Assembly (NCBI GenBank): GCA_000388065.2
Contig: KB932207.1
Strand: one strand, 5' to 3'
Length of the DNA: 30,461 nucleotides
From: Fonticula alba ATCC 38817
Lineage: Eukaryota; Protista; Nucleariida
The notes below the pieces were generated by a model. It was not told the DNA's origin. It searched no databases and saw only the letters and a list, made by a program, of their open reading frames with translations. Positions 348 to 30,227 of the stretch are shown here, piece after piece; the first letter of the stretch is position 1, and the number at the start of each line of letters is the position of its first letter. The position numbers and the translations under genes were made by a program.

Positions 348-2295
348 TCAAACGGGGACATACCCCGGTGGCGGCCGGTCGGCCACACACCGGAAGCCCA
401 GGTTTCCCGTGGCTGTTGCCAGCTGCTCGGTATCCTCGACAGCCATCGGCCCAGGCAGCTGGCCAAAGGCAAAGGACCGGGCGCCGATGCGCGCCCGATG
501 GCAGAACGACTGGGCAAAGTGGGGCGACAGGGACAAGATGCGGCATTAGTCAACGACCGTGGGTCATGGGGGGGGAGGGGGGGGGCAGGGCAGAAGGGGA
601 GGCCATGGGCCGCCACAATGGGCCCCCAACGGGCTCCGGCCCGGGAGTAACACAAACAAGCGAGCGGAAGTGCAAGTGACCGAGCACACGAGCACACGAG
701 CACACGAGCACCGGCGTACCGGATGGCACATGTACGACCCGCCCTTGAGGACAAATTCCTCGAGAACGGCACCCCCTGCTGGCTGGCCCTGTCGCGACGT
801 GGCTGTCCACTCCCAGACATTGCCAATTAGATTGAAGAGACCCGCAACCGGGGCAGACGCCGGGCCGCCGGCCGGCCGGAGAGTGTGCTCCGGGAAGGGG
901 GCGGGCACTTGGGCCGGGAAGGCGCCCGTCGGAGCCGTCCCGGGCCAGCCATCCCCGCCAGACACCAAGCCCGCCTCCGAGAGATCGACATTGTTCCCCG
1001 GGAAGTCCCCGCGCCAGACATTGGCCCGTGGCGTGCCCTTGGTGAACGGGTAAATGTCAGTGGGGGAGCTGGGCAGGCCACTCGGCGCCATGGGACATGG
1101 TGGGGAAGCGGATGCGCCACAGGGGGCAGGGGCATTTTTGGCGCACCGTGGGCCAGTCAAAGGCCGCGGCCCAGGGGAATTGCCAGGGCGGCGCGTCGCC
1201 CGGGGAGGCCGGCCCCGGGGGAGCAAGACGCCGCCGGCGCTCTGGGGCATGGCGTGCCGCCCGCGCGGCCCATTCCCACTCGATTTCGGTCGGCAGGCGC
1301 ATGCCGTAGAAGTGACAAAAGGCCGCCGCATCCTCCAGCGACACATGCGTCACAGGGTGGTCCACTCGACGGCCCAGCGGCCCGTCGAGCTGGGAGGAGG
1401 AACCAGGCCGGAGCAGGGCGAGGCAAGCCAGAAGGGTCAGCGAAGGATGCCATCTGGCATGGACCGGCGGGGGAGCCGGCCGTCGGCTGTACGTACCAGC
1501 GATGAGTCCTCCCCTTCCGGCGAGTGCCAGAAGGCTCGGTCGACAAGACGCCACCATGGGACACTGGATTGCAGCAAGGCCGCATCGTGGGCCCAGTGCG
1601 CCGGCGAGTGCCCGGGCTGTCAGGACGAAGTCAGCGATCGCCACCAGGCGAGCAGGGGGGGGGGGGGGAACCCCGGCGGCCAGGAGGCCTCATGAAGGCG
1701 GGGTGGGGGGAGATATGCGCACCTGGCTGAGAAGGCCCTCCCACACGAAGCCCCCGCGATCTGGGTGGGGATCCCGCTCGCGCGTGCTCACATAACCACT
1801 GGCGAGCGAGAAGTGGGCAAACGCAGCGGCGGTCACCTCGCCGGCCTGCACGTAGAGCGGCCGCGGGTTGGTGGCCATGGAATCGCCGGCCGGCAACCGC
1901 CCGGGCCAGGGCCCGACAGTGTCCACATCCGGCGGAATCACCACGCATCGGGGCGGAAACTCGCCATCCACATGCATGTATGGCGCCTCGGCGGTGCCGA
2001 TGCGCACGGCCCCTGGCCCGCAGCCGGCCCCGGCCGTGCCCCCTGGCCGGGGGAAGAGCACCAGTTGCTGCGAGGGATCCGCCGGGCGAGGCAGATCCCG
2101 GGCCATGCGCTCCATGAGGGCCGCCCGGTCGAGGTCCAGGTTTCGAGCTGCGCACACGGCCGGCCGTCCCAGGCCCGGGGTCGGGCGAGACGCGGCCAGG
2201 GCGGCCGACGAGCAGCCGCACCCCATGCTCACCGGGGCACCGAGGGCCCGATGGAGGAGGGCGACGACGATCAGAAGCAAGAGGCTGAGCCGCAT
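348..2295 (-). CDS. SUMF1: Formylglycine-generating enzyme (sulfatase-modifying factor 1), 5 exons, ~471 aa
   Basis: Model: complement(join(348..509,720..1037,1147..1389,1497..1616,1723..2295)), all introns phase 0 and GT-AG. The protein has a signal peptide (MRLSLLLLIVVALL), an N-terminal CGC, and the FGE motifs DGEFPPR, FVWEGLLS, PWW..V....W..PEG, DHPVTHVS...AAFC...RLPTEIEWEWAAR, ANVWRGDFP and GLFNLIGNVWEWT. Across the last junction it reads KGGSYMCHP|SFCHRARIGARS...GNLGFRC. Confidence 0.95.
682..711 (+). repeat. 8-bp tandem repeat (GAGCACAC)~3.7 in SUMF1 intron 4
   Basis: Seen directly in the sequence. Confidence 0.8.
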
Positions 2296-4717: not shown

Positions 4718-5655
4718 ATGGGACCCCTTGATCGAGCCCGGGATGCTTCGGCACCAAACCCGGGGACCCGGTCCTCCCTCTCCCCAACCGGCGATCTTTC
4801 GGACGGGCCCCCTCACAAGCCGATTGACGATGAGGAGGACGACGAGGATGATGAAGACGACGGGGCCGAGGAGGAGGAGGAGGAGGATGAAGAGGAAGAT
4901 GACAACGACGACGACGACGACGACGACGACGGCGAGGACGGTGAGGATGGTGCCGGCGACAAGTGCGCTCCATGGATCTTGCCTGTGCCCACAGCTCCGC
5001 CCCCCCCCCCCCCCCGAATGCGGCCACTGACCGACTCGCCCTCCTCGCTAGATCCGCCAAGAAAGCACGCATCGAGTCCATGAAGATGGAGGCCATTGCC
5101 TATGCTGCGGCCGCCGGATACCGGTACGCCCTTGTGCCCCATTCGACATCCCCGCTGTGGATGTGGCTTCCGGGAGCCTCGGTCGCTAACCGATGTGCCC
5201 TTTTGCAGGATCCCCAAACTCGACACCCCGGAGGCCATCGAGGCATGGAAGGCCGAGCGCCGGGCCCGGTGGCCCACGGCCGCGCGTGTCGAAGCCAAAA
5301 AGGCTGCCCTTGAGCAGGCGCCCGTGGCCACGACCTCTGGGCCCTCCGGCGCGGCCGAGCACCCGGCCAGCGCCGGACCCAAGCAGCCGACCGTCCGGGT
5401 GTGTCACTTCTTCCGCAAGGGATCATGCAAGCGCGGGAACATGTGCAAGTTTTCGCACGACCTCTCGGCCGATGCCAAGCCTCGGGCCGGGGCGCCGGAA
5501 AACGCCAAGGTGCGTGTCCTGCCATATATGACCGGGCCACGCCGGGGGGCCATGGGGGCGGCCACCGGGCAAGGGAGCCGCTGCTCGAGCTTTTTTCCCT
5601 TCACCTGGGCCTGCAGCGATTCTGACCTCGTGCATCCGGCCATGTGCTTGCGATC

Positions 5656-5694
<39 letters not shown>

Positions 5695-6124
5695 TAGTCC
5701 GCTGCCAAGGCACGCAGCGCCCGGGAGCGGAGCCAACCCGGTGGTCTCATTCATCAGGTACGCATGCTGGGGTGGGCCCACGCACACACACACACACACA
5801 CACGCACATGCAGGCAGACTGTCTGTCTTATTTTCCCGGGGAATAATCGCCAGCGTAAGGCGAGCGATCTCCCGCCCCTGTTTCCGGCGGACATCGCCGA
5901 TCGAGGCATGGGCGACAGGAGACAACGGGGGCGGAGGGGCAGGGGGGGGGGGGGGGGAACCACACACACACGACACACAGTCACGCACGCATGCTCAACC
6001 ACCCCCGCACTGCCCGCTGACCTGGCCAAATTCGATCGCTCGGAAGCTGATGGCGGTGGACATGGAGCGGACGCGCTTTGTGGCGGCGCAGCTCCTCAAC
6101 CGGATGATCGGCGATATCATGTGA
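4718..6124 (+). CDS. NUFIP1: NUFIP1/Rsa1-like box C/D snoRNP assembly factor with C3H1 zinc finger, ~251 aa (start codon tentative)
   Basis: Model: join(4718..4962,5052..5123,5209..5509,5698..5757,6047..6124). An acidic tract precedes the PEP motif GYRIPKLDTPEAIEAWKAERRARWPT. This is followed by a CCCH finger (C-x7-C-x5-C-x3-H, CHFFRKGSCKRGNMCKFSH) and a C-terminal helix GLIHQLMAVDMERTRFVAAQLL resembling NUFIP1 'LLEKLLAPDIRHERNVILQ'. A possible upstream intron (4466-4696) means the 5' end may extend further. Confidence 0.8.
5657..5692 (+). repeat. (CA)n microsatellite in NUFIP1 intron 3
   Basis: Seen directly; it ends just before the TAG acceptor at 5695-5697. Confidence 0.9.
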
Positions 6125-7070: not shown

Positions 7071-8268
7071 TTGGGCCATTGTGCTCAGTCCTTGGAGCCT
7101 GCTATTTGTGGCTGATGCCACTCTGCCCGAGGGGGCCTGCCTCCTCGGCTGGTTCATCGTTGTCTCCTCCTCCCCCCCCTTCTCTGGTAACCCCTCTGGC
7201 ACCTCTGTGAGTCTCCCCCCCCCCCCTCAGTTCCCCCATCGACATCCTCGCCCCCCTCGCCCCCTGCTCTCTATGCTTCGCCCCTCCTCCCCCCCCCCCT
7301 CCCCCCACTGCAGCCACACATACACACATGCGACAGCAGCCTGCGCGTGTGCATGCCCCCCACTGCACCAGGGCGTGCTCGCCGCGTGGCTGGCGGGCAC
7401 ACGCGCACGTGCGACTGCTCCGCCGGATCGCGCGCGGGCACTGGCCGCTAGTATGCGTGCGCACGCGCGCGCGCTCGCGTGTGTGTGTGTGTGTGTCTGT
7501 ATGCGTGCACGCAGTGCCCGGCCCTGCTGCATGTCGACCCCCTACCTCCTCTCCCTTTCGGTCGCCCCCGCTCCTTCTCATCGCGTCACCTCTCCCGCCA
7601 TGATGATGCCCCCCCCCTCCTGCCCCCGCCCACCCGCCCTCCCGCCTTCCCGCCTTCCCAACTGTCATCCCTCCTTTCTAACCAAGTCCCCTTTTGGTCT
7701 CTTCCCCCCCCTCCCGCGCCTTCCTGCCCCCTTCGCTTCCCCGCGCACGCGTCCTCCTCCCCCCACCTCTGCCTTTGCCTCCGCGGCACGCGCTGCGCCC
7801 AGCCCTGCCCCCCCGGGTTCACCTCTGCCACCTTTCACCTCGGAGGGCACTCACCGCCACTCGCGTGTCCCTCGTCGCCTGCCTGCCTGACCCCTCGCAG
7901 GACAGTCGTCCCCCTCCTTGCCACTTCTTGACAACGACCCCCTTCCCCCTGCATTTGCCGCCGCGCCCAAACGCCACCCGTTGTCCCTGATCCCGGGTCT
8001 CCCTTTTTGGCTTGTTCGTCCACGTCAACCACACCTCCCTTCTTCGCCCTTTCCTTTCTTTGTCCCCCCCTCTCTCTCGCGCGCTCGCTCGCTCGCTCGC
8101 TCGAGGAGTCTCCCTTCTCCCCCTCTTCCTCTCCCTCCCCCCTCCCCGCTGCCCGAACGTCCATCTCACCGCCCGGATCTTCCGGTGTCTCGCCCCACGC
8201 CACTCCCCTCGGCCCGCCCCCGCCCCCCACCCCCACCCCCACCCCCACCCCCTGCAGCAGCCGCTGCC

Positions 8269-11200
8269 ATGCTTCATCTAGCCTCCAGGCGCTTCGCCTC
8301 CGGGCCGCCGCCCGGCGGCCTGAGCGCGGCCCACATCGCGGCGCGCCTCTTCTCCACGCAGATGTCGCCGGATGCGCGCGCCTATCAGCGTCTGGATCAC
8401 AAGACCGGCGATGCGGCACACGATGCCGAGGCCCTGCAAGCCCTGATCGATGACAAGTTCAACGAGAAGTACTTCGACCTGAATGACCCGGAGGCCCGGG
8501 ACTCCATTCGCTTCCTGGCCGACGGTGCCAAGTCCCCGATGAGCCACTTCTGGAACCAGGACCTGAGCCGCGACGCCAGCCGGCGGAACATGTACCGGTA
8601 TCTTGCCGGCAAGTTCAGTGGCCAGATGTACGATGGAACCATCTCCCGGGATGACATGGTGGATGACATGGATCTGCGCTTCTCCATGCAGCATTCCGAG
8701 TCCAGCTTCGCCGACCTGGACACCCTGGACGCCGTGGATGAGAATGGCTTCGATCTGGGCCCGGTCGGTGTGCGGGACCACATGTTCCAGCGGTCGTCGG
8801 CCATCCGTGGCGCGGCCGGTCGCCTGCAAATCCGTGACAATGAGTATGATGTCAAGGTCATCGACCGCCTGGCGACCGAGCTCTTCCAGGCGCAGCTGGA
8901 CAAGCGCAAGGCCACCCTCCAGGATCTGGAGCTGCTGGCCCGGGTGAACCACCGCCTGGCCCAGCTGAACGGCCCGCGGCTCACTCTCACCGACCTGGCG
9001 CAGCTGCGCGCCGGGCGGGAGCTCCGCGACCCGGTCAGTGGCTGGCGCTCGTTGGCCCCGGTCGGCGACGCGTATGCCGCCCAGCGCCTGCCCCTCATGT
9101 CTCGCGAGGAGTTCGCCGCCGAGCTGCCCACCATCCTGACCGAGGCCGTGGATGCCTCCAACAAGGAGACCTTCGAGGCCATCATGTCCAATCGCGAGAA
9201 GTATGAGGACCGCTTCTATGCCCTGTATCGGTCCTTCCATGAGGATCTGCCCCAGGGTACGGGCATTTCGCTGGCCGGCCGGGCCATCGAGATCCCGGAC
9301 TTCGACTCGCCCGTGCACGCGCGCGACTGGGTGGCCAAGAACCTGGAGTACCTGCTCTTCACTCGGCCCATCATCGAGAACATGGCCTTCGATGCGCATA
9401 CCTTCCTCCCCCGGAGCCAGGAGCCGATCCTCGGCTCGCGCGAGAACAACTACACCACCTTCTCCCCGCGCATGCACACCCAGGACCCGCAGTACTTCCT
9501 CAACAACTCGGATCTCTACTTCGGCGCCATCACCGAGAATGAGATGGCCGCGCCGCATGACCTGACCTACTTCGTTCACCGTGACACTCACGAGCTGCCG
9601 GTGCGTGCGGTGCTGCCGACTTGTGCTCCCCTTTGCCGGGCTCCCGGGTGCCCGCTGCTCGGCTCCCGCAGTTACTAATCCGCCTCTCGCTCTTTCGTGG
9701 CCACCTTGTGTGTTTGGCGAATGTCGTTGCTGGCCCCCGCCCCCGCCCCTTTCCCAGCGTGCCCCGCTTGACATCGACGAGGGCCTGCTGAACGAGCATG
9801 AGGACGAGGACCACGAGCTGGATATGCGCAACACCATGCGCGACCGCCTCGGCCGGCCGGACACCATCACCGGCTATGTGCAGAAGCAGATGTACCACCT
9901 CAATCGCCTGTACCCGGACATCTACACCCCGAACAACCTGGCCCTGCTCTTCAACCTCCGTGTGCGCGAGGCCCGCAATGTCCTGGTCATCCAGCAGCGC
10001 GGTGCCGAGCTGAACAAGGCTGTGCGTACCGCCACACCGCCGCGGGGGCGGCCGAGCGCCCGCAATGTTCTTTCTTTGCTTTTTGTTCTTTTCTTCCCTG
10101 TCGTCGCCACCGCCACCGCCACCGCCACACCATCACCACCGGCGCCTCTCCTTCCAACGGGCCGGTGCCGCCATTCCCCCTGACTCACCCCCTCCACACT
10201 GCTTTTCCCGGTCTCCCTCCACCACCGGCCCTCGGAATCACCGCGCAGGGCTACCCCAACCACTTCCAGATTGAGTCTCTCATCGAGGGCGAGCAGAACC
10301 GCGCCTACGGCCGTCACCATGACCACGAGATGACCGGTCTGGTGGACAACCTGTCGTCGCCGATCGGCATGGAGCCCGGTGCGGTCAACTACCAGTACAT
10401 CCCCAACATGCCGGAGGCGCCGGACGCCGTGCTGGACCCCTCCTCGCGGCGGTTCTTCACCACCATGGAGAGCCAGGCCAGCCACACGGCCGGTCTGAAC
10501 CGCCGCCGGGCCATGATCGAGCCCTTCACTCGCGGCATGTCCGACACCCAGATCCAGGCCTACGTGGAGGACCCCTTCAACAAGGTCCTCGATGAGCGGT
10601 CCCTGGCCCTCGAGGATCCGGGCGTGGTGGTCAACAATGCCGTCATGGGCAGCGTCTTCCCGCTGAACTACGGCAACAAGCTGGACGCCGTGGAGGAGGC
10701 CCTCTTCACCGATCCCGACAGCCCGACCAAGGGGCTGAACTACCAGGATCTGGATGAGCATGAGCGCCTGCTGGCCAAGCTGGTCATGCTGCGCGTGTAC
10801 CACGTGCGCCACATGCGCGAGGTGGCTCCCTTCATGAAGGAGTATGAGACCCAGCTGGAGGCGCAGTTTGGCGCCTACTGGACCCAGGCCGTGGAGATGG
10901 GCACCGAGGTGGGGGACATCGTGCCGAGCATCATCGCCTCGCGCGTGGCCAGCGGCACCAAGCTCAAGGACCGGTCGGCTCTGGTGGACCGGTTCCTGAA
11001 CCCCTCGGACAGTGACCTGCGCGCGCAGTATGACCAGTTCATGGACAACCGCGCCGGGGCCGGGATCCCGGCCGGCGCTGCTGGGCTGTATGCGCCGAGC
11101 TTCGACGAGTATGCGGCCCGGGTGCGCCGTGTTCGTGCGGCCTATGCCCACACCCTGCCGCATGATGGGGATCTCGATGGGCTGGCCGCGTCGACCACCA

Positions 11201-14200
11201 AGATCTTCGACATCGCCCAGCTGGATGGGCTCCCTCGTAGCGAGGCCCAGCAGCTGCTCACGGACAATGACGATGCCGTGTTTGCCCTGCTGGATCGCAT
11301 GCTCTTCAACACCAACAACATGACCGGGCGCATGCGTGACATGGTGCGCGATTTGCAGCTGTACCAGGAGCTCCGGTACAAGCATTCGCACGATCTGAGC
11401 CAGTCGCTGCTGCCCAGCCGCCAGGAGACCTACCTGGCCTCCTTCGCCGCGCGCATGAAGGAGTTCCGCAAGCAGTACAGCGCGCTGCGCATTGACGGCC
11501 GGCCGGCCGAGAGCTTCACCTCCATCGGCCTCGGTGTGCTGGACCCGGCCAACACTTGGCTCGGGGACTTCTCCCTCAACCACCGGCACCGGTCGCTGAC
11601 GTCCACGCTGGCCAGCTTCGCCGAGGCCAGCCGCGGCCATGGGTCCGACAAGGTGGTCTTCTGGCCGGAGGAGACCGAGCATGCCAACCTCCGCGAGCGT
11701 GGTCGTCTTGGCCGTCGTGGGGCCGTGTCGCCGCGCGTGCGCGAGACCGATGACAGCGACAGCGAGGATGACTCCTTCGACGAGGTGCACCAGTCGACCA
11801 CCACTCCCCAGGCTCATGCCAAGCTGCTGAAGCGCACGATCGATTACGATGCGCGCAACAACATCGAGGAGTTGCATCCGCTGGTTCGCGACATGCTGGG
11901 CTCCATCTTCGGGGAGGGCCGCGCGCCGCAGCTGTACAGCCAGCTGAAGGACCCGAATGTCAAGCAGATGGCCGACTTCCTGAGTGTCATGCTGCAGGAG
12001 GTGGACTTCCATGGGAACCCGATGCCGGGCGCGGTGCAGAACCCGATGGCCATCCTGGCGGCGCACAAGTTCCTGGGGCTGGTGCGCGATGCCGCCCAGC
12101 GCGAGCTCAATGCCAACATCAACTTCGACTTCGACCCGACCCAGGTCATTGGCAATGCCGTCTACAAGAACTACAATGCCAGCGGGAGCTTCGACTTCTT
12201 CAACTACTATCGGGACATGCCGATCTTCGATGTGCCGCTGCCGCTGCCGTCGCAGTTCCCGGCCCTGGCCGCTCGCCAGCAGATCTTCCTGTCGGCCGTG
12301 TATGATGGTCGCCAGGATCAGCTTCTGCGCGCGCATGCCATGGGTGTCGAGGCCATCGACGAGCTGGAGACCCGCATGCGTGCCCGCTATCCGGAGCACT
12401 TCCCCGACGATCTGGACACCAGCCGGTACTACCGGTCTCGGGGGGACATCCGCCCGGAGATCCGGCCGCTGTTTGCCACCTTCGACAATCCGTCGGTCGA
12501 TCGCCATGCGCTGATGGCCGTGCCCAATGAGGAGGCCATGCGCATTGCGGCGGCCGGCTTCAACTATGCCTACAACACGGATGCCGTTTTCGATGAGATC
12601 TACGGCTCGGAGCTTTGGTCGACGCACTTCAGCGCGGACTTGCCCTTCAGCCTGCCGGAGCACCGGATCAACCTGCCCTACCGGTTGTCGCTGCTGCGGG
12701 AGCTCAATGACCGGGTGTTCTATGCCAACCGGTTTAAGTTGATCTTCGACATGATGAACGGCACGGCGGTGCCCTTCATCCCCAACACCATGAGCATCCT
12801 GCTGCCGGATACCGACCGGCACATGCAGATTCTGGCCAACTCCCTGGCCGGCCTGGGGCATCTGGATGCCGGGCGTAACATCAGCCCCGGCAGTGATCCG
12901 GCCACCTTCGGCCTGTATGTCGACCCGTCGGAGGAGCGCTCCCTCGAGGACGAGGAGGAATCCGACGAGGATGAGGATGACCCGCTGAACCCCAGCTATG
13001 TGATGGACTTCGGGTCGGCCGGGTTCGGTGGGGTTGTCCACCCGCACCAGCTGCCGGATGACGCCACCCGCGCGGACTTCGTCTTCATGCATGCGCTGGC
13101 CGACTACATGTCCCCGGGCAAGCAGATGTACAGCACGGCCGACACTCGGGACAGCTTCTTCCCGCCGACCGAGCGGCTGGACGTTGCTCAGTACTATGTC
13201 AACGACGATTCGGATTCCGATGAGGATTCCGACGGCTCGGATGGCTTTGATTCGGACCAGGGCGATGGCGGCCAGGGCGGCTCGTCCAGGCCTCGTCGCC
13301 GGGCTCCGCGCAACGACTTCGACTTCCCGCGCATGCCGCTGGGCAGCCGTGCCGCTCGGTTCCCCAAGTCCTCCCAGTACTTCTTCGATGGGAAGATCCG
13401 CCAGATGAAGATTGCCCGTGACAACCTCCATGCGGAGATGATGCACGCCATCGAGGGCCCGCTGGTGCCGTACCATGATGCCCCGTCATTGACCCCGGTG
13501 CAGGCGGCCCTGGTGCTGGTGCTGCGCATGATGGATGACATGATCCTGTCCCGGGCGCAGACGCGCCTGCCCCTGCCGGACTTCAAGCGCACCAACCCGG
13601 ATGGCACGCCGAATGACGCCCTGCCGCCGGCGGTCTTTGTCACCTTCAACATCGATGCCGACATCGACGATGTGGAGGACCTGACGCGCGAGCTGCCGGT
13701 CCCCATGACGAACCCCTTGTTCCATGGGTTCGAGAACTTCAACTCCGTGGACGAGGTGCAGACCTTCATCCGGCAGTTCACCCAGCACCCGAACATCAAG
13801 TTCCGGGAGGATGGCATCCAGCCGCACATTTCGATCGACCCCCTGCTGGAGGCCATCAAGGCCAGCGGCAAGAAGGAGGAGCAGATCAGCCCCCGCGAGC
13901 AGACCCTCATCCAGTATTCGATCGATGAGCTGAACAAGATCATCGATCACAACAATTACATGTATGAGCGCCTGCTCCTGCCGGCGGCCGAGGACACCCT
14001 GGACCTGTTCACTGCCCTGGATGAGATGATCCAGACCCGGCAGCCGGGCTCCGTGGGCGAGCTCATGACCATGATCGCCGAGGATGAGACCCTGGCGCCG
14101 ATGGTGTGCACCGATGAGGATGACCCGATTGCCTTCTACAACAAGCATGAGGGCTCCAATGCCCACACCTTCAATGTCAGCGAGCTGGCGTACAACCTGA

Positions 14201-14997
14201 CGGTCATGCGCACGGCCGCCGTGCTGGATGATGTCATTGTGCCGTCCTACCTGCAGGAGGCCTTCCAGCATACCAAGAACCAGCTGGAGCGCGTGTCCCG
14301 GGTGCCCACCTTCCGGACTCTGGATGATGAGGTGCCGATCCGGACGAACCTGCATGCCCTGCGCGCGCACGATCTCTACCATGTTTCCTTCATGTCGCCC
14401 GGCCAGCTGGATGGCGAGGTGGACCAGTTCCAGGCCTTCGCGGATTTGGCCGCCTCGGCCATGGCCCATTCGGAGATGGACCGCGAGCACAACCTCTTCC
14501 GGCTGAACACCTACATGCGTGGCATTCAGTCGAGCATGACCCTGCCGCTGCCGCATGTGGATTCCTCCTTCAATGCGTACAAGGATGTGGAGAACTTCCG
14601 CGAGCTGATGGACCTCGACCGGATTCCGGAGATCCGCGGTGAGATGCTGGACATTGTCCGGGCCGAGCGCGACCTCGTCACCCCGGAGAACATGGAGCAG
14701 ATCGAGTACCTGCTGCACAAGAACCACCGGCGCCCGCGCGACGACCCGAATGCCCGGGACCCGGCTCTGGTTGTGCGCAAGGACCCGGCCCCGGTGGACA
14801 ACCGCCATGTTCTGCAGTTCTGCGACACCTCCGAGTCCCGGAACTACACTCACACCTACCGCGAGCGCGATGGCACTCTGCGCCGTGCCACCCACAGCGA
14901 GAATGCCCTCCTCAACCACCCGCGCGACCGGGACCTGGCCCGGATGGATAACATCGGTGATGCCGTCCGCCAGGGTCACTTCATCCCCAAGAAGTGA
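8269..14997 (+). CDS. Giant hypothetical protein (~2114 aa) with a predicted mitochondrial presequence and an mS45/Bot1-like helix-turn-helix segment
   Basis: Model: join(8269..9600,9758..10021,10249..14997), both introns phase 0 with GTGCGT donors and CAG acceptors. Strong GC3 codon bias and globular-type composition support real coding (confidence refers to the CDS; the product call is about 0.5). The N-terminus MLHLASRRFAS...AARLFST has three Arg and no acidic residue before position 35. Exon 2/3 encodes MYHLNRLYPDIYTPNNLALLFNLRVREARNVLVIQQRGAELNKA|GYP. Confidence 0.9.
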
Positions 14998-25887: not shown

Positions 25888-28800
25888 TCACAGCCGCAGG
25901 GGCGTTTGTAGCCAGGCCCCTAGGAACACCTCCGTGAGGAACCCGGCCCCGTGTGCGAGAACCATGATGACGAACCTGGTCAAGAAGGTGTGAGCTCGTG
26001 GGTGGAACATAGGAAATAGAGGCAGGGAGGGAGAGAGGGAGAGAGCGGGAAGAAAAGGAAAGGTGGATGGTGGCCAGGGGAGGGAGAACAGCCGGAAAAG
26101 GCGCCCAAGGTGCGCGCAAATAAAGCGCCAGCATCGTACCGCGGGGCAAAGACACTCCAGATGAAAAGGTGCCGTCGGAGGATGGCCGTGGCCACCACCG
26201 TGCAGACAATGGCCAATAGATCGATGGCACAGGCGGCGGCCGAGGTGACACGCAGCCGGGCCCCGGCGTCGGAAGCTTCGAGCCCGGGCCCGGCGAACCA
26301 CGCGGCCAGGAAATGTGCCCGAAGGACCCAAGCCCCGAAGAGGGCCATGCAGATGAGCCCCCCACTCAGGACCATGTGTGCCCGGTGGAGGCCGATGAAG
26401 CCGGGCCACCATTGAATCGAGGCGAAGACCGTCTGGTGGCCGGTCTTGAAGAAAAGGTGCAACGCCAAAAATGACAGGATCCCCCCGCCCAGGAGGCCCT
26501 GATGCAGGGGAGCACGATCGCGAGAATGCCCGGGCCGCTGGCCGGGCATCGAAGGAGACCCCACCGGCAGGGGGATGCACGCCAGGACGCCAATCCAAAC
26601 ATGGCACACTCCCGGCCCGCTGAGCAGCTTGCATAGGCTCAGCAGCGCAGCCAGTCGCGCGAGCAAGCCATCTTGCACAACCTGGCGAGGGTTCGGGTGG
26701 GTGCGCCCGCCGGGCCAAATGTACGTGGCTGCGAGCAGGAGGTACAGCGCGCGGGGAGGCCACTGACAAGGGGCCAAACAGGCGACGGGAAGGCAATCGA
26801 GGGGGTGGGGAGTGGATGTGTGTGTGTGTGTTAGGGTCATAGAGGGCGAGGGAGGGGAGAGAGTAGCGGGGAAGAGGCGGAGGGAGGGAAGGAAGGAAAG
26901 GGCAACACAGGTTGGAGAGTCGCGCCAGGTAGAGAGGAGGCACAAGAAGAGCATGGCGGAGGAGGAGGAGCGGGGCGGCACGCGGATCACGGACCAGGTG
27001 AGCCAAATCCAGCCAAACCGGAGCAGCGTTCTCACCGGACAAGAGACTGTCGCGCCAGCGTGACAGGCCCCACCACGCCAGGATGGCACTCCCGGCAAGG
27101 GTATACACGACGAATGCCCGCGATCGCAAGGCCCGACCAACACTGCGATCGCCGCGCACACACACCAATGCCACCGCCAAGGCCAGGCACTCCAGCGGGA
27201 AGACGGCCAGCTGGTGTGGACCATGGTTCCACAGGGGATCCGCCTGGCGCGTGGGGCTCACGAGGAAGTCCCACAGCGCAATACCCAGGGACGGAAGGGG
27301 GGCGCCCGGGTCGGCTGTCGATGCGGGAAGTCCGGCCGCGTGGGCGGTCGGCGAAAAGAGCAAACTCGGGTCGTCATCATTCGATGCCCGTAAAAAGACC
27401 AGCCCCGGGGCCAGCAGGCGGAAGATCACCAATGGCGCCAGGGCCTGGATACTGGCTCCGGTCTGCGGATCAGGGCAATGTCAGGCCAAGCGGGCTCCCT
27501 GGGAAGGGTAAAAGTGGCCGGGAGGGGCCGGGGCGAAGGGGCAGGGGGGCGGGAGCCCTGGCCAAAAGCACGCACATTGCCTTGGCGCAAGTGTGACCAG
27601 GCCAGAATGACCAGCAAACTGGATAAAGCCCACCAAGTGACGTCGGCCTCGGCGGCAATGAAGCTGTTGGAGAAGGGCTGCGCGGCCACGGCCAGGGCGA
27701 TGGTCACCAATGTCACAAGTGTCTGGATGAGGTTTGAGGCGCACGGGGGGGGGGGGGGGGGCATGGGGCATCAGTTGAGATGGAGAGCAGGCGCAAGGGA
27801 ATCGGCCCACCGACAGCGAGAAAGGGGTGGACTTGCTCTGGTGGCCAGGCAGAAGGCCCACGCACAGAGACGCGGAGGCCACGCTGACACGCGGGAGAAT
27901 GTGCCGGGGCCGCCGGGGCGACAGCCATGTTCATGTTCTTTTCGGCGACCGCCGAGCCCGAGAAGGCGGATGCCAGCCACCAAATCAGCACCCCGGCCAG
28001 CGCACACACGCCGAGCCCCAGTCGCGTGGTGTCGAACTCGGCCCACGCCCGGCGACAGCGCAGCCCGGTGGCATGGAGGAAAGTCCGAGTGAGACGGTTG
28101 CACCGGGCCAGCGGCCGGTCATCGATGTCGGCACCCGGCCCGGAAGAGGGGAGGCCCGCCGAGGAGAGCATGGTCTCGGGGCTGAGCGTCTCGCCGAGGA
28201 GCACACGCGTGAAGGCAACCTCATAGCAGAACTCCAATTCGGCAAAGGCGGACACCAGCTCGACAAGGGAGGGGATCCCCCCGGCAGTGGCGTACGTCTG
28301 CCCGGCAGCCACGGGACACGCCTCATGGTCCGGGGCGGCGGTGTGTGCATGCAGCACCGGCCAAACGGCCTCCGGGTTGCCAGTTCGCCGGGCATCGGCC
28401 AGCTTAATGGCCAAGTCTCGGCGACCAGGGTGCCGGTCGGTAGCCAGGGCTTCAGGCGCATCGGCCAGCTGCTGCTGCTGCTGTTGCTGCCGCTGCTGCT
28501 GCTGCTGACTGCCCCCGGGGGCGGCATAATGGGACAAGAAGCGAACCACCTGCCGGAGGGTGGCTCGCAGGGCGGCAGCCTCGGTGGTATGTGAGCCTGG
28601 GAAGGCCCGGGAATCGAAGCAGCCAGGGGGGGGGGGGGGGGGGGGGGGCGCATGTGAGTCGGGGCCGAGACAGGCCAAGCCCGCGGCGCCGCATGCGCAT
28701 ACGCACTTGTGAACAGCCCCTCGATGGGGACACCGAGAGAACTGAAGGGAATCGGAACGCCAGTCAACAGGGCCAATGTCGGAACGTAGTCCGTTTGGAA

Positions 28801-30227
28801 GATCGGCTCCCCGACCGGCGGGGGTACACAGGTCCCAGCCTCGTCCAGCAGGCCGACGGCCCGGCCATCACAAGCAGCCCCGCCGCTCGGGGCCCAAACC
28901 CACAGGGCACTTGTGGTCTCGGGCAGGGTGTCTCCCCCGTGGTCGCCGGTGACGGTCATCCCGTGGTCGCCCAGCACCAGGAGGGCCGTGCTGCCGGGCA
29001 ACTGGGGAATGGCAGAGGTCAGGGCCTGGAGAAAGCGCTCGACCTGGTGGATTTTGCGCTCGAGCGCTCCGGATGGGTGGTGTGGCCCGAGACGATGGCC
29101 AACATGGTCCAGGCCCAGCATATGGCCGATAAGCACATCCCAGCTTGGGCCTGAGCGGCGGTCGGTCAGTGGCAAGATGCGCAGCCGGGGGAGGAGGGAG
29201 GCGGGGGACCAAAGAGCAGGACATCGACCGGGCATCAGGAAAGGCGGCACGACAGAACAGAGCGAGCGAGGCAGGACGCACTGCCGCTGACCGGGATGTG
29301 GTCCACCCACTCGGCGAGACCGTCAAACCCCTGGAGGATGTCCGGGTCATGGAGCTCCAGGCACCGAGCGAAGTAGCGGATGACCGCGGCGTCGACCGTG
29401 TCCAAGTCGGCCACGTCGAAGCTCGGCAGCGCCAACACCTGGCTGCAGGCCGAGCGCCCGGCTGGCTGGGGCGGCTCCCCCTCGCGCATCGGAGCCACCC
29501 CGCCCAGGCGGCCCTCCGGGAAGAGCCCGACCCAGGTGTCGTCGCCGACGAAGCGCACCGCCCGACCGGCCCGGCGCCATGCGTCGGGCAGGGAATCCTC
29601 GCCGACAGCACGCGCGGCGAAGTTCGATCCCGCCTCCACGAAGGCCGGCAGCCCGCCGGTATTGAGGGCCTTCAGGCGCTGGAGAGTGGTGGTCGGGGCA
29701 TCGGCGATGAATTGCCGGAGCATGGTCCGGTCGGGCTGGCTGTCGAGCAGACGCCCCGGGGTGTGGAGAGCTGGCAGGGGCGTGGTGGCGGCGGAGAAGC
29801 CGGCCCCAAAGTTGGCATCCGCAAAGTCATACCGCAGGGCATCCACCAGCAGGACAATCACCCGATCGAAGGGGCGCAGGACTCGGCGCGCCTGGATGGC
29901 CAGGCGCCCAGCCAAGTGGTCCATTTGCTGGTGAAGGGCGGCCCCATGGGCAGGGCACTGGTGCCGGGTGTCGAGCAGGGGCAGCGGCTTCCAGGCTGGC
30001 ATGCTGCCCACCGGCTGGTCGGCCGGGTGTCCGGCCAGTGGCTGGGTCAGATCCGGGAGCGCCACACCGAAGGCAATGTCCCCCCAATCGGCTGGTCGAT
30101 CGACCGGGGTCCGAGTCAGCAGGAATCCCTCGGCGAAAAGCCACACCCCGATTGCCAGGAACAGGGCAAACATGGTGCGTGCGGCCAGCCCGGCGCCCGG
30201 GCCTGGCCGCAGCAGGGGGAGGGTCAT
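25888..30227 (-). CDS. PIGO: GPI ethanolamine phosphate transferase 3 (PIG-O/Gpi13), 7 exons, ~1148 aa
   Basis: Model: complement(join(25888..25975,26140..26762,26995..27462,27576..27722,27866..28596,28707..29150,29282..30227)). Motifs: TM-GFLLTR, VLLVDALRYDF, ADAPTTTLQRLKALNTGGLPAFVEAGSNF, GDDTW, PSFDVADLDTVD, HMLGLDHVGH, GDHGMTVTGDHGG, QTDYVPTLALLTGVPIPFSSLG, CRRAWAEFD, SNSFIAAE, FFKTGHQTVFASIQW, RRHLFIWSVFAPRF. Donors at 27865 and 26994 are best-fit choices. Confidence 0.95.

What the first reader, a model, noticed from the sequence alone, without database searches (positions are those of the whole stretch)
8269..14997. ~2100-aa predicted mitochondrial protein carrying an mS45/Bot1/GCD1-like domain: candidate giant lineage-specific mitoribosomal subunit
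Seen: a clean 3-exon CDS of 2114 aa with an Arg-rich, acid-free N-terminal presequence (..RRFAS..ARLFST) and no obvious transmembrane helix. Exon 2 plus the exon 3 junction (about aa 480-535, nt 9863-10257) reads MYHLNRLYPDIYTPNNLALLFNLRVREARNVLVIQQRGAELNKAGYP. Known, from memory: mitoribosomal mS45 (fungal Bot1/Mrps35, plant GCD1) has a helix-turn-helix with the pattern MY.L....P..[YW]T...LA..[YF].....RV.AIL.L...E.......G.P, and these proteins are only a few hundred aa. Inference: this is a several-fold expanded mS45 whose ~1600 aa of unrecognised, globular-looking sequence could be new mitoribosome mass. The normally conserved R of 'RVxAIL' appears as E here, so the match is not perfect.
Basis: partly seen in the sequence, partly recalled or inferred. 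Interest (0 to 1): 0.72.

Follow-up and report, generated by a model that had tools for sequence, protein, structure and literature searches.

The report
Giant mitoribosomal mS22/mS45 of Fonticula
This expressed gene of the amoeba Fonticula alba most likely encodes a 240-kDa version of a mitochondrial ribosome protein (mS22, called mS45 in fungi and plants) that is normally 200-400 residues long, which would make it the largest ribosomal protein I found on record; the kinship rests on weak matches and the protein has not been shown in a ribosome.

Summary
The 3-exon, 2114-aa CDS equals the public Fonticula alba model H696_04394. Transcript contigs show both CDS introns spliced, plus an unnoticed 5'UTR intron.

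Pfam finds nothing. Word and exhaustive HMMER searches covering residues 1-1200, the motif region and exon 3 find no relatives; residues 1201-2114 had only a sparse word search.

Four lines point to mS45:
- A protein language model search with aa 440-660 puts three Bot1p (mS45) clusters first.
- I fished genuine mS45 genes from metagenomes. Their profile hits solved mS45/mS22 mitoribosome chains.
- That profile's only hit in the 2114 aa is aa 485-528 (hhalign P about 0.002).
- New here: the family's C-terminal motif has its best hit at aa 2050-2083, at the expected position (P about 0.001-0.04).

The architecture is presequence, a 450-aa extension, a basic three-helix domain, a 1,500-aa acidic orphan insertion, then a basic C-terminal motif. 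Chlamydomonas mS45 (999 aa) is a precedent. Ribosome membership and uniqueness in the genome were not tested.

The scan's unchecked notes list other giant mitoribosomal proteins elsewhere in this genome. This is a new variant of a known kind.

The parts
7765..8013 (+). Non-coding first exon (5'UTR). The start is approximate, taken from the extent of the transcript contigs.
   Evidence: Contig records begin about 135 nt upstream of 7900 and run to 8013. There is no ATG in the 5'UTR.
8014..8257 (+). 5'UTR intron, 244 nt, GTTCGT..CAG.
   Evidence: The contigs join 8013 to 8258. The 7 letters between the laid pieces equal 8258-8264.
8269..8367 (+). Presequence-like N-terminus, aa 1-33: acid-free, 3 Arg, two R-x-F|S/A sites.
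   Evidence: No predictor was available, so targeting is inferred.
8368..9865 (+). N-terminal extension, aa 34-480 (51 kDa, pI 4.9). It has no relatives and is interrupted by intron 1 (9601-9757).
   Evidence: Pfam and PDB find nothing. Exhaustive HMMER finds only one borderline hit, P0002.
9601..9757 (+). CDS intron 1, 157 nt, GTGCGT..CAG.
   Evidence: Spliced in contigs of all four runs.
9866..10284 (+). A3T2-like three-helix domain plus the following G.P....IE.L motif, aa 481-544 (pI 9.6). It spans intron 2 (10022-10248).
   Evidence: hhalign P 0.0012 and 0.0019. The family HMM's only hit is 485-528. The Atlas's top three clusters are Bot1p.
10022..10248 (+). CDS intron 2, 227 nt, GTGCGT..CAG.
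   Evidence: Spliced in contigs of all four runs.
10285..14799 (+). Orphan insertion, aa 545-2049 (170 kDa, pI 4.85), non-repetitive. Three acidic linkers lie at 11737-11793, 12916-12999 and 13198-13257.
   Evidence: No Pfam, PDB or word-search relative. Only aa 545-1200 of it was also searched exhaustively. No internal repeats. Coding-like GC3 throughout. Linker coordinates.
14800..14901 (+). C-terminal family motif, aa 2050-2083, probably the B2T2 domain of mS22. With the tail it has pI 9.6.
   Evidence: The family C-HMM's best hit in the whole protein is 2051-2080 (1 of 2000 shuffles). hhalign P 0.037-0.071. It is the top BLASTP segment against the chytrid protein.
14902..14997 (+). Basic tail, aa 2084-2114, and the stop codon.

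Best explanation
The gene encodes Fonticula alba's mitochondrial small-subunit ribosomal protein mS22 (the protein called mS45, Bot1 or GCD1 in fungi and plants) in a giant, 240-kDa form.

Proposed mechanism:
- A short presequence imports the protein into mitochondria.
- Two small basic elements anchor it at the mS22/mS45 site on the body of the small subunit. These are the three-helix A3T2 domain (aa 481-544) and a C-terminal motif (aa 2050-2083, probably B2T2).
- The acidic 450-aa N-extension and the acidic 1,500-aa insertion between the anchors project outward as protein-only mass. I expect a body protuberance near the mRNA entrance, like the one the mS45 insertion forms in Chlamydomonas.

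Shown here: the gene, its splicing, its expression, the absence of relatives in the searches run (aa 1201-2114 by word search only), and the two nominally significant colinear family matches.

Inferred: homology, import, ribosome incorporation and the protuberance.
For: - The gene is real and expressed.
- The ESM Atlas feature search of aa 440-660 ranks three PF12298 Bot1p clusters first (0.89, 190 of 256 features). Neugrin and MRP-L20 clusters, which carry the same domain type, follow.
- Independent family members were fished by a degenerate DNA pattern and confirmed as Bot1p/MRP-L20 by Pfam.
- Their profile hits solved mitoribosome chains named mS45 or mS22: 6xyw, 9evs, 6yw5, 5mrc, 8d8j, 7pkq, 7ane.
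- hhalign of that profile against aa 440-640 gives P 0.0012 and 0.0019 over 56-63 columns that cross the exon junction.
- The family HMM's only hit in the 2114 aa is 485-528. Only 2-5 of 2000 shuffles reach its score.
- Among about 7,000 background pieces, it is the best one that the DNA pattern did not select.
- The family's C-terminal motif has its best hit at 2051-2080, 34 aa from the end as in relatives. Only 1 of 2000 shuffles reach it.
- That C-terminal match is the top BLASTP segment against the chytrid orthologue, 39% identity with a shared GTLRRA.
- Both motifs are basic (pI 9.6) in an acidic protein (pI 5.0).
- The N-terminus looks like a presequence.
- Precedent: mS45 is described as highly variable, and a >400-aa insertion forms the Chlamydomonas body protuberance (PMC8660880).
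- A two-domain mS22 is expected in non-Dikarya relatives of fungi (PMC7947838).
Against: - Pfam Bot1p, MRP-L20, Neugrin and MRP-S22 give no hit even at E<=10.
- phmmer against PDB and against 1.84 billion representatives finds no mS45.
- The third helix lacks the family's R-V-x-A-I-L signature.
- The C-terminal match is weak by hhalign (P 0.037-0.071) and with a plant-enriched HMM (15-20 of 2000 shuffles).
- The Atlas gave nothing for aa 2000-2114.
- AlphaFold was uninformative for the Fonticula segment (pLDDT 35). It did not resolve the C-terminal motif even in the chytrid protein.
- I built the C-terminal HMM after noticing by eye that the Fonticula C-terminus resembled the chytrid one, so its P values are post hoc even though no Fonticula sequence is in the alignment.
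Confidence: 0.7

Rival explanations
1. The protein does carry an A3T2-type three-helix domain but is not the ribosomal subunit. It would be a paralogue of the mL58 / Rrg9 / Neugrin kind, or a lineage-specific mitochondrial RNA or translation factor that binds the ribosome transiently or not at all.
For: The A3T2 domain is shared by mS22/mS45, mL58 and Rrg9 and does not by itself tell them apart (PMC7947838). Genuine mS45 members hit Bot1p and MRP-L20 about equally. Neugrin clusters score only 0.02 below Bot1p in the Atlas.
Against: Bot1p clusters hold the top three ranks. The similarity extends past helix 3 into the mS45-type G.P....IE.L stretch. According to PMC7947838, mL58 has no C-terminal domain, yet this protein carries a C-terminal family motif at the expected place.
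Confidence: 0.13
2. The resemblance is chance. This would be a fast-evolving Fonticula-specific orphan protein, perhaps mitochondrial, whose function has nothing to do with mS22/mS45.
For: No curated profile or database-wide search reaches significance. About 95% of the protein has no match at all. Three-helix motifs are common, and the best PDB hit of the segment was a homeodomain at E = 0.82.
Against: Three things point to one family out of thousands: two colinear matches, each at P of about 0.001-0.04, at the positions the family architecture predicts, and an independent language-model retrieval of that same family. Both motifs are also basic islands in an acidic protein.
Confidence: 0.14
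3. The 2114-aa model is an annotation artefact: a fusion of neighbouring genes, or a spurious long ORF of a GC-rich genome.
For: GC-rich DNA gives long chance ORFs. The antisense strand here has one of 1184 aa (9922-13476).
Against: Single transcript contigs of about 6.6 kb span the 5'UTR, both spliced introns and exon 3 without further joints. Strong codon-position GC periodicity holds over the whole CDS. The splice sites are GT..AG on the + strand.
Confidence: 0.02

Closest known systems
mS22 / 'mS45' (S. pombe Bot1, S. cerevisiae Mrps35, Arabidopsis chain 6xyw_BD; Pfam PF12298 Bot1p)
   Same: It has an N-terminal presequence and a three-helix A3T2-type segment carrying the family's M-Y..L....P..Y-T...L-A..F signature. 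The following G.P....IE.L stretch is present. A C-terminal F-x-D-x-S ... G-T-L-R-R-A motif lies close to the end, as in the chytrid and protist members. The domain order is the same.
   Different: It is 2114 aa against 217-420 aa for typical members. Helix 3 lacks R-V-x-A-I-L. It has a 450-aa N-extension and a 1,500-aa acidic insertion between the two family elements. It scores below every curated threshold.
Chlamydomonas reinhardtii mS45 (PDB 7pkq chain C, 999 aa)
   Same: It is a greatly enlarged mS45 in which lineage-specific helical mass is added to the conserved core. That mass forms the small-subunit body protuberance near the mRNA entrance (PMC8660880).
   Different: The Fonticula protein is twice as long again. 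Its added sequence shows no detectable similarity to any PDB chain, the Chlamydomonas one included. No structure exists.
Kinetoplastid giant mitoribosomal proteins mS48 (1788 aa) and mS49 (1181 aa)
   Same: They are very large protein-only scaffolds of a protein-rich mitochondrial small subunit (PMC8998825).
   Different: Those are lineage-specific proteins with no universal core. Here a conserved subunit appears to have been inflated. The lineage is also different (Holomycota).
mL58 (MRP-L20, PF12824), Rrg9 and Neugrin (PF06413)
   Same: They share the A3T2-type three-helix domain, and they appear just below Bot1p in the Atlas ranking.
   Different: They are large-subunit or assembly proteins. 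PMC7947838 describes mL58 as carrying a single A3T2 domain and no B2T2; for Rrg9 and Neugrin I did not check. The Fonticula protein has a candidate C-terminal mS22-type motif.

Membership tests
mS22/'mS45' (Bot1p) | Match to the curated Pfam models of the A3T2-bearing families (PF12298 Bot1p, PF12824 MRP-L20) at the gathering score | tested here: not met
   There is no hit for any exon, for aa 440-640, for aa 470-560 or for the whole protein, even at E<=10. Genuine plant members reach only 26-33 bits, so these models have little reach.
mS22/'mS45' (Bot1p) | A3T2 domain: about 50 residues, three helices and two turns, with the family signature | tested here: inconclusive
   For:
- hhalign P 0.0012 and 0.0019.
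- The family HMM's only hit in 2114 aa is 485-528, with i-E 0.0036 and 2-5 of 2000 shuffles reaching it.
- It is the best unselected piece of about 7,000.
- The Atlas's top three clusters are Bot1p.

Against:
- The significance is nominal, not database-wide.
- Helix 3 is degenerate.
- The structure prediction was uninformative.
mS22/'mS45' (Bot1p) | C-terminal B2T2 domain (about 40 residues) downstream of A3T2, as in the two-domain mS22 of chytrids and most protists | tested here: inconclusive
   For:
- The best hit of the family C-HMM in the whole protein is 2051-2080, with 1 of 2000 shuffles reaching it.
- It is the top BLASTP segment against the chytrid protein.

Weaker or negative:
- hhalign P 0.037-0.071.
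- The plant-enriched HMM is weaker.
- The Atlas gave no hit.

That this motif equals Valach's B2T2 is my inference. Pfam MRP-S22 does not detect it even in genuine members.
mS22/'mS45' (Bot1p) | Mitochondrial targeting | tested here: inconclusive
   The N-terminus is acid-free for 34 residues, has 3 Arg, and carries two R-x-F|S/A sites. The chytrid orthologue starts with a similar RRFST. No targeting predictor or localisation data were available.
mS22/'mS45' (Bot1p) | Physical component of the mitochondrial small ribosomal subunit | not testable with these tools
   This needs mitoribosome purification with mass spectrometry or cryo-EM.
mS22/'mS45' (Bot1p) | Orthology: the only or best mS22/mS45 candidate in the Fonticula proteome (reciprocal search) | not testable with these tools
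   The Fonticula proteome could not be searched on its own. The family-profile word search returned no Fonticula protein, but it scored only 8,000 candidates. The scan's notes on this genome mention no mS22, mS45 or Bot1, which is weak evidence.

The most novel reading that the evidence does not exclude
Fonticula alba builds a mitochondrial small subunit of unprecedented protein mass. This 240-kDa mS22/mS45 would be larger than the largest mitoribosomal proteins named in the review I read (T. brucei mS48, 1788 aa). Its 1,500-aa acidic insertion would form a new protuberance at the mRNA entrance. It would be one of a set of inflated small-subunit proteins that the scan noted elsewhere in this genome (mS29, mS26, uS2m, uS9m, uS10m, bS18m, mS31; all unchecked). 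If so, ribosomal gigantism arose independently in a close relative of fungi.
Probability: 0.5. Interest if true: 0.72.

Novelty: new variant of a known kind. Interest (0 to 1): 0.58.

Why it matters
mS45 is already described as a highly variable mitoribosomal protein, and its insertions shape the small subunit. A 2114-aa version would extend that range about twofold. It would also show that a universal subunit, not only lineage-specific additions, can be inflated to a size above the largest kinetoplastid scaffold proteins.

Fonticula is a cultivable sister lineage of fungi, so the prediction can be tested directly by mitoribosome purification and cryo-EM. Together with the scan's other (unchecked) notes, it suggests that the Fonticula mitoribosome is a new extreme of protein enrichment. 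That bears on why and how mitoribosomes accrete protein.

On the practical side, the public record calls this gene 'hypothetical protein' and standard annotation (Pfam) cannot name it.

Tried and rejected
Searches that found nothing useful:
- Pfam on each exon, on junction-spanning parts of P0001 and on the whole protein.
- PHROGs on aa 150-400.
- phmmer against PDB with aa 440-640, aa 2020-2114 and the whole protein. The only hits were a homeodomain at E 0.82 and PCF11 at E 0.34.
- Word search with exon 3 and with aa 440-660: only self, or nothing.
- Exhaustive HMMER of aa 1-1200 against 1.84 billion representatives: only self plus P0002. P0002 is 341 aa, E 2.8e-4, 26% identity to aa 181-374. 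It has no Pfam or PHROG family and sits on a 1.7-kb prokaryote-like contig. I treat it as uninformative.
- ESM Atlas on aa 2000-2114: no usable hit.
- The C-terminal-motif profile against PDB: no hits, so the profile is too weak for a database search.
- Pfam MRP-S22 on genuine family C-termini: no hits, so it cannot be used to name the motif.
- The supplement of PMC7947838 (species lists) is not held.

Structure predictions:
- AlphaFold on aa 420-700 from a single sequence gave pLDDT 35 and is unusable.
- AlphaFold on the chytrid orthologue with the family alignment resolved the three A3T2 helices at pLDDT 93-98 but not the C-terminal motif.

Other:
- A self-comparison found no internal repeats.

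Hypotheses rejected: an artefactual or fused gene model, recently exonised non-coding DNA (codon-position GC is coding-like throughout), a transmembrane protein, and a repeat protein.

Procedure:
- Exons were searched by reference.
- Stretches across the exon 2/3 junction were taken only from the stored public protein P0001, which a tool returned and which equals the three exons.
- I sent no self-joined sequence to any search tool. One script concatenated the exons only to compute codon-position GC and hydrophobic moments.
- Read laying was given 5,901 letters.
Full report
**What is there.** The window is GC-rich eukaryotic DNA. The three exons are 8269-9600, 9758-10021 and 10249-14997 on the + strand, and they translate to 444 + 88 + 1582 residues. 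A word search with exon 3 returned a single protein, P0001: 'hypothetical protein H696_04394 [Fonticula alba]', 2114 aa and 100% identical. A script confirmed that each exon translation sits in P0001 at aa 1-444, 445-532 and 533-2114.

**Expression and splicing.**
- Four 2012 runs (one study, two samples) hold 93% of the sampled words of the gene.
- Laid on 7900-13800, each run gives one contig of about 6.6 kb. It skips 9601-9757 and 10022-10248 (GT..AG) and is otherwise continuous and identical. These runs therefore contain spliced RNA.
- The contig lengths fit a transcript that ends about 55 nt past the stop codon.
- The 5'UTR has no ATG, so 8269 is the first AUG.
- Codon-position GC is coding-like in every 200-codon bin (GC3 0.82-0.93, GC2 0.34-0.47), while the introns are flat at 0.67-0.70. 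The whole 2114-aa frame, the unmatched parts included, behaves as long-standing coding sequence.

**Properties of the protein.**
- It is 240 kDa with pI 5.0. It is rich in Asp, Leu, Ala and Arg and nearly free of Cys and Trp.
- The first acidic residue is at position 35, and the first 33 residues hold 3 Arg.
- RRF|AS and RLF|ST fit the R-3 type of matrix-peptidase site. That motif is from my own knowledge, and no predictor was available.
- The best hydropathy window is 1.28, so a transmembrane helix is unlikely.
- There are no internal repeats apart from three acidic linkers.

**Standard homology searches fail.**
- Pfam gives nothing for any exon, for junction-spanning parts or for the whole protein, even at E<=10.
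- phmmer against PDB gives only a homeodomain at E 0.82 on the YPDIYT..LAL..EAR stretch, and PCF11 at E 0.34.
- A word search with aa 440-660 finds nothing at E<=10.
- An exhaustive phmmer of aa 1-1200 against 1.84 billion representatives finds only the protein itself and one borderline 341-aa protein from a short prokaryote-like contig. I regard that hit as uninformative.
- Residues 1201-2114 were covered only by the sparse word search of exon 3.

By sequence the protein is an orphan, as far as these searches reach.

**Test of the mS45 idea, step 1: language-model search.** The ESM Atlas feature search with aa 440-660 ranks three clusters of PF12298 Bot1p first (0.89, 0.88 and 0.88; 190 of 256 shared features). 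Neugrin and MRP-L20 clusters follow, and all ten best family-bearing hits belong to one family or clan. A score below 0.9 is only a lead.

**Step 2: literature.** S. pombe Bot1 is mS45 (PMC8565316). Valach et al. 2020 (PMC7947838) make three relevant points:
- Fungal 'mS45' is a derived mS22.
- The ancestral protein has an N-terminal A3T2 domain (about 50 residues, three helices, shared with mL58 and Rrg9) and a C-terminal B2T2 domain (about 40 residues).
- Chytrids and most protists keep both domains.

This gave a fresh prediction: a relative of fungi such as Fonticula should have a second family element downstream.

**Step 3: real family members.**
- No tool hands out Bot1p sequences.
- Of 57 loci, about 45 encode one clear family from plants, green algae, a fungus and several protists.
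- Pfam confirms Bot1p and MRP-L20 on them.
- A profile search added a chytrid protein (P0010, Chytriomyces, 275 aa), two basidiomycete proteins and green-algal proteins, all carrying Bot1p.
- The family alignment A3 hits solved mitoribosome chains named mS45 or mS22: Arabidopsis 6xyw_BD at E 4.5e-43, then 9evs_e, Neurospora 6yw5, yeast 5mrc and 8d8j, Chlamydomonas 7pkq_C and 7ane_o.

The comparison set is therefore the right family, and it was collected without using the Fonticula sequence.

**Step 4: the A3T2 region.**
- hhalign of the family alignments against aa 440-640 aligns aa 481-544 over 56-63 columns, with P = 0.0012 (A1) and 0.0019 (A3).
- Shared features are M-Y, L, P, Y-T, L-A and F of helices 1 and 2, and the G.P....IE.L stretch after helix 3. 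The alignment runs across the RNA-confirmed exon 2/3 junction.
- A family HMM reports a single hit in the whole 2114 aa, at 485-528 (3.7 bits, i-E 0.0036). Only 2 of 2000 global and 5 of 2000 local shuffles reach that score.
- Among 7,118 six-frame background pieces, the Fonticula exon-2 piece ranks just after the family members and the pieces that the DNA pattern itself had selected.
- AlphaFold on the chytrid protein resolves the three helices at pLDDT 93-98. The single-sequence model of the Fonticula segment is unusable.

**Step 5: the C-terminus (new here).**
- The family alignment shows a conserved motif within the last 70 residues of chytrid, basidiomycete, protist, green-algal and plant members.
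- The Fonticula protein ends with a similar stretch at aa 2050-2083. It shares F-x-D-x-S and then R-x-x-x-G-T-L-R-R-A with the chytrid protein.
- I noticed this resemblance by eye before building the HMM, so the figures below are post hoc. The HMM itself holds family members only.
- That HMM has its best hit in the whole protein at 2051-2080 (4.5 bits), and 1 of 2000 shuffles reach it, global or local.
- A plant-enriched HMM keeps the position but is weaker, with 15-20 of 2000 shuffles reaching it.
- hhalign gives P 0.071 and 0.037.
- In BLASTP of the chytrid protein against all 2114 aa, this is the top segment (39% identity, E 0.46).
- The Atlas gave nothing for aa 2000-2114.
- Pfam MRP-S22 fails even on genuine members. 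Equating the motif with B2T2 is therefore my inference.

Each line is weak on its own. Taken together, the hit is the best in the protein, lies 34 residues from the end as in relatives, and is colinear with the A3T2 match.

**Architecture.**
- aa 1-33: presequence.
- aa 34-480: acidic N-extension (51 kDa, pI 4.9).
- aa 481-544: A3T2-like segment (pI 9.6).
- aa 545-2049: acidic orphan insertion (170 kDa, pI 4.85, three acidic linkers).
- aa 2050-2114: C-terminal motif and tail (pI 9.6).

Two basic islands at the family positions, inside an acidic protein, fit ribosome-binding anchors that carry peripheral protein mass.

**Comparison with what is known.**
- Typical members are 217-420 aa, but the family is not uniformly small. 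Chlamydomonas mS45 is 999 aa, and chains of 530-604 aa have their A3T2 domain 260-370 residues from the start.
- Waltz et al. 2021 call mS45 'a highly variable r-protein'. Its insertion of more than 400 aa forms the small-subunit body protuberance near the mRNA entrance (PMC8660880).
- In ciliates mS45 is part of the back protuberance. The largest kinetoplastid mitoribosomal proteins are mS48 (1788 aa) and mS49 (1181 aa) (PMC8998825).
- The Fonticula protein would exceed these sizes. I found no paper that links Fonticula to mitoribosome composition.

**Context from the scan (unchecked leads).** Other windows of this genome carry notes on giant mS29, mS26, uS2m, uS9m, uS10m, bS18m, an mS31-like protein, mtIF3 and Pam16. 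The scan has therefore seen this kind of thing before on other DNA of this genome. I did not test any of those notes.

**Verdict.**
The name should be refined to mS22/'mS45', and the extra mass is an N-extension plus a large internal insertion between two family elements.
- The homology rests on nominal, not database-wide, statistics. Import, incorporation into the ribosome and uniqueness in the genome are untested.
- This is a new, extreme variant of a known and notoriously variable mitoribosomal protein.

- Exons were searched by reference.
- Junction-spanning pieces came only from the stored public protein P0001.
- I sent no self-joined sequence to a search tool. One script joined the exons only for composition statistics.
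- Read laying received 5,901 letters.

Noticed in passing
window 8014-8257: A 244-nt GT..AG intron lies in the 5'UTR and ends 11 nt before the start codon. It is spliced in all four transcript contigs. The first exon (about 7765-8013) is non-coding and has no ATG.
   Followed up: partly
window 9922-13476 (- strand): An 1184-aa open frame runs antisense to exon 3. I take it for a chance ORF of GC-rich DNA, because the splice sites and codon-position GC support the + strand.
   Followed up: partly
window 5096-6124 (+): The upstream neighbour encodes a NUFIP1 domain (E 1e-11) followed by a CCCH zinc finger.
   Followed up: no
window 25980-29310 (-): Two ORFs match the phosphodiesterase domain and the PIGO/PIGG membrane region. 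This is probably one spliced GPI ethanolamine-phosphate transferase gene.
   Followed up: no
window 564-1346 (-): An ORF has a weak FGE-sulfatase (sulfatase-modifying factor) domain hit, E 1e-6.
   Followed up: no
window 8809-9390 (aa 181-374 of the protein); P0002; L058: This is the only non-self hit of the exhaustive search. P0002 is a 341-aa protein on a 1.7-kb prokaryote-like metagenome contig, 26% identical over 226 residues (E 2.8e-4), with no Pfam or PHROG family. It may be chance or a real shared fold; this is unexplained.
   Followed up: partly
PDB 8a22 chain Yc: The 159-aa Polytomella chain named 'mS109' matches the A3T2 part of the mS45 family profile at E 4.9e-17. It looks like a piece or paralogue of mS45 under another name.
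   Followed up: no
P0011:286-359 and P0012:171-232: Two basidiomycete Bot1p proteins keep a C-terminal K-F-[VI]-D-V-G motif that aligns with the chytrid and protist C-terminal motif. PMC7947838 states that fungal mS45 kept only the A3T2 domain. A remnant of the second domain may survive in Dikarya.
   Followed up: partly
L034:1332-2429 (-): A metagenomic protist protein has an A3T2 domain at its start and the C-terminal motif about 270 residues later, with an acidic spacer between them. It is a smaller example of the insertion site proposed for Fonticula.
   Followed up: no
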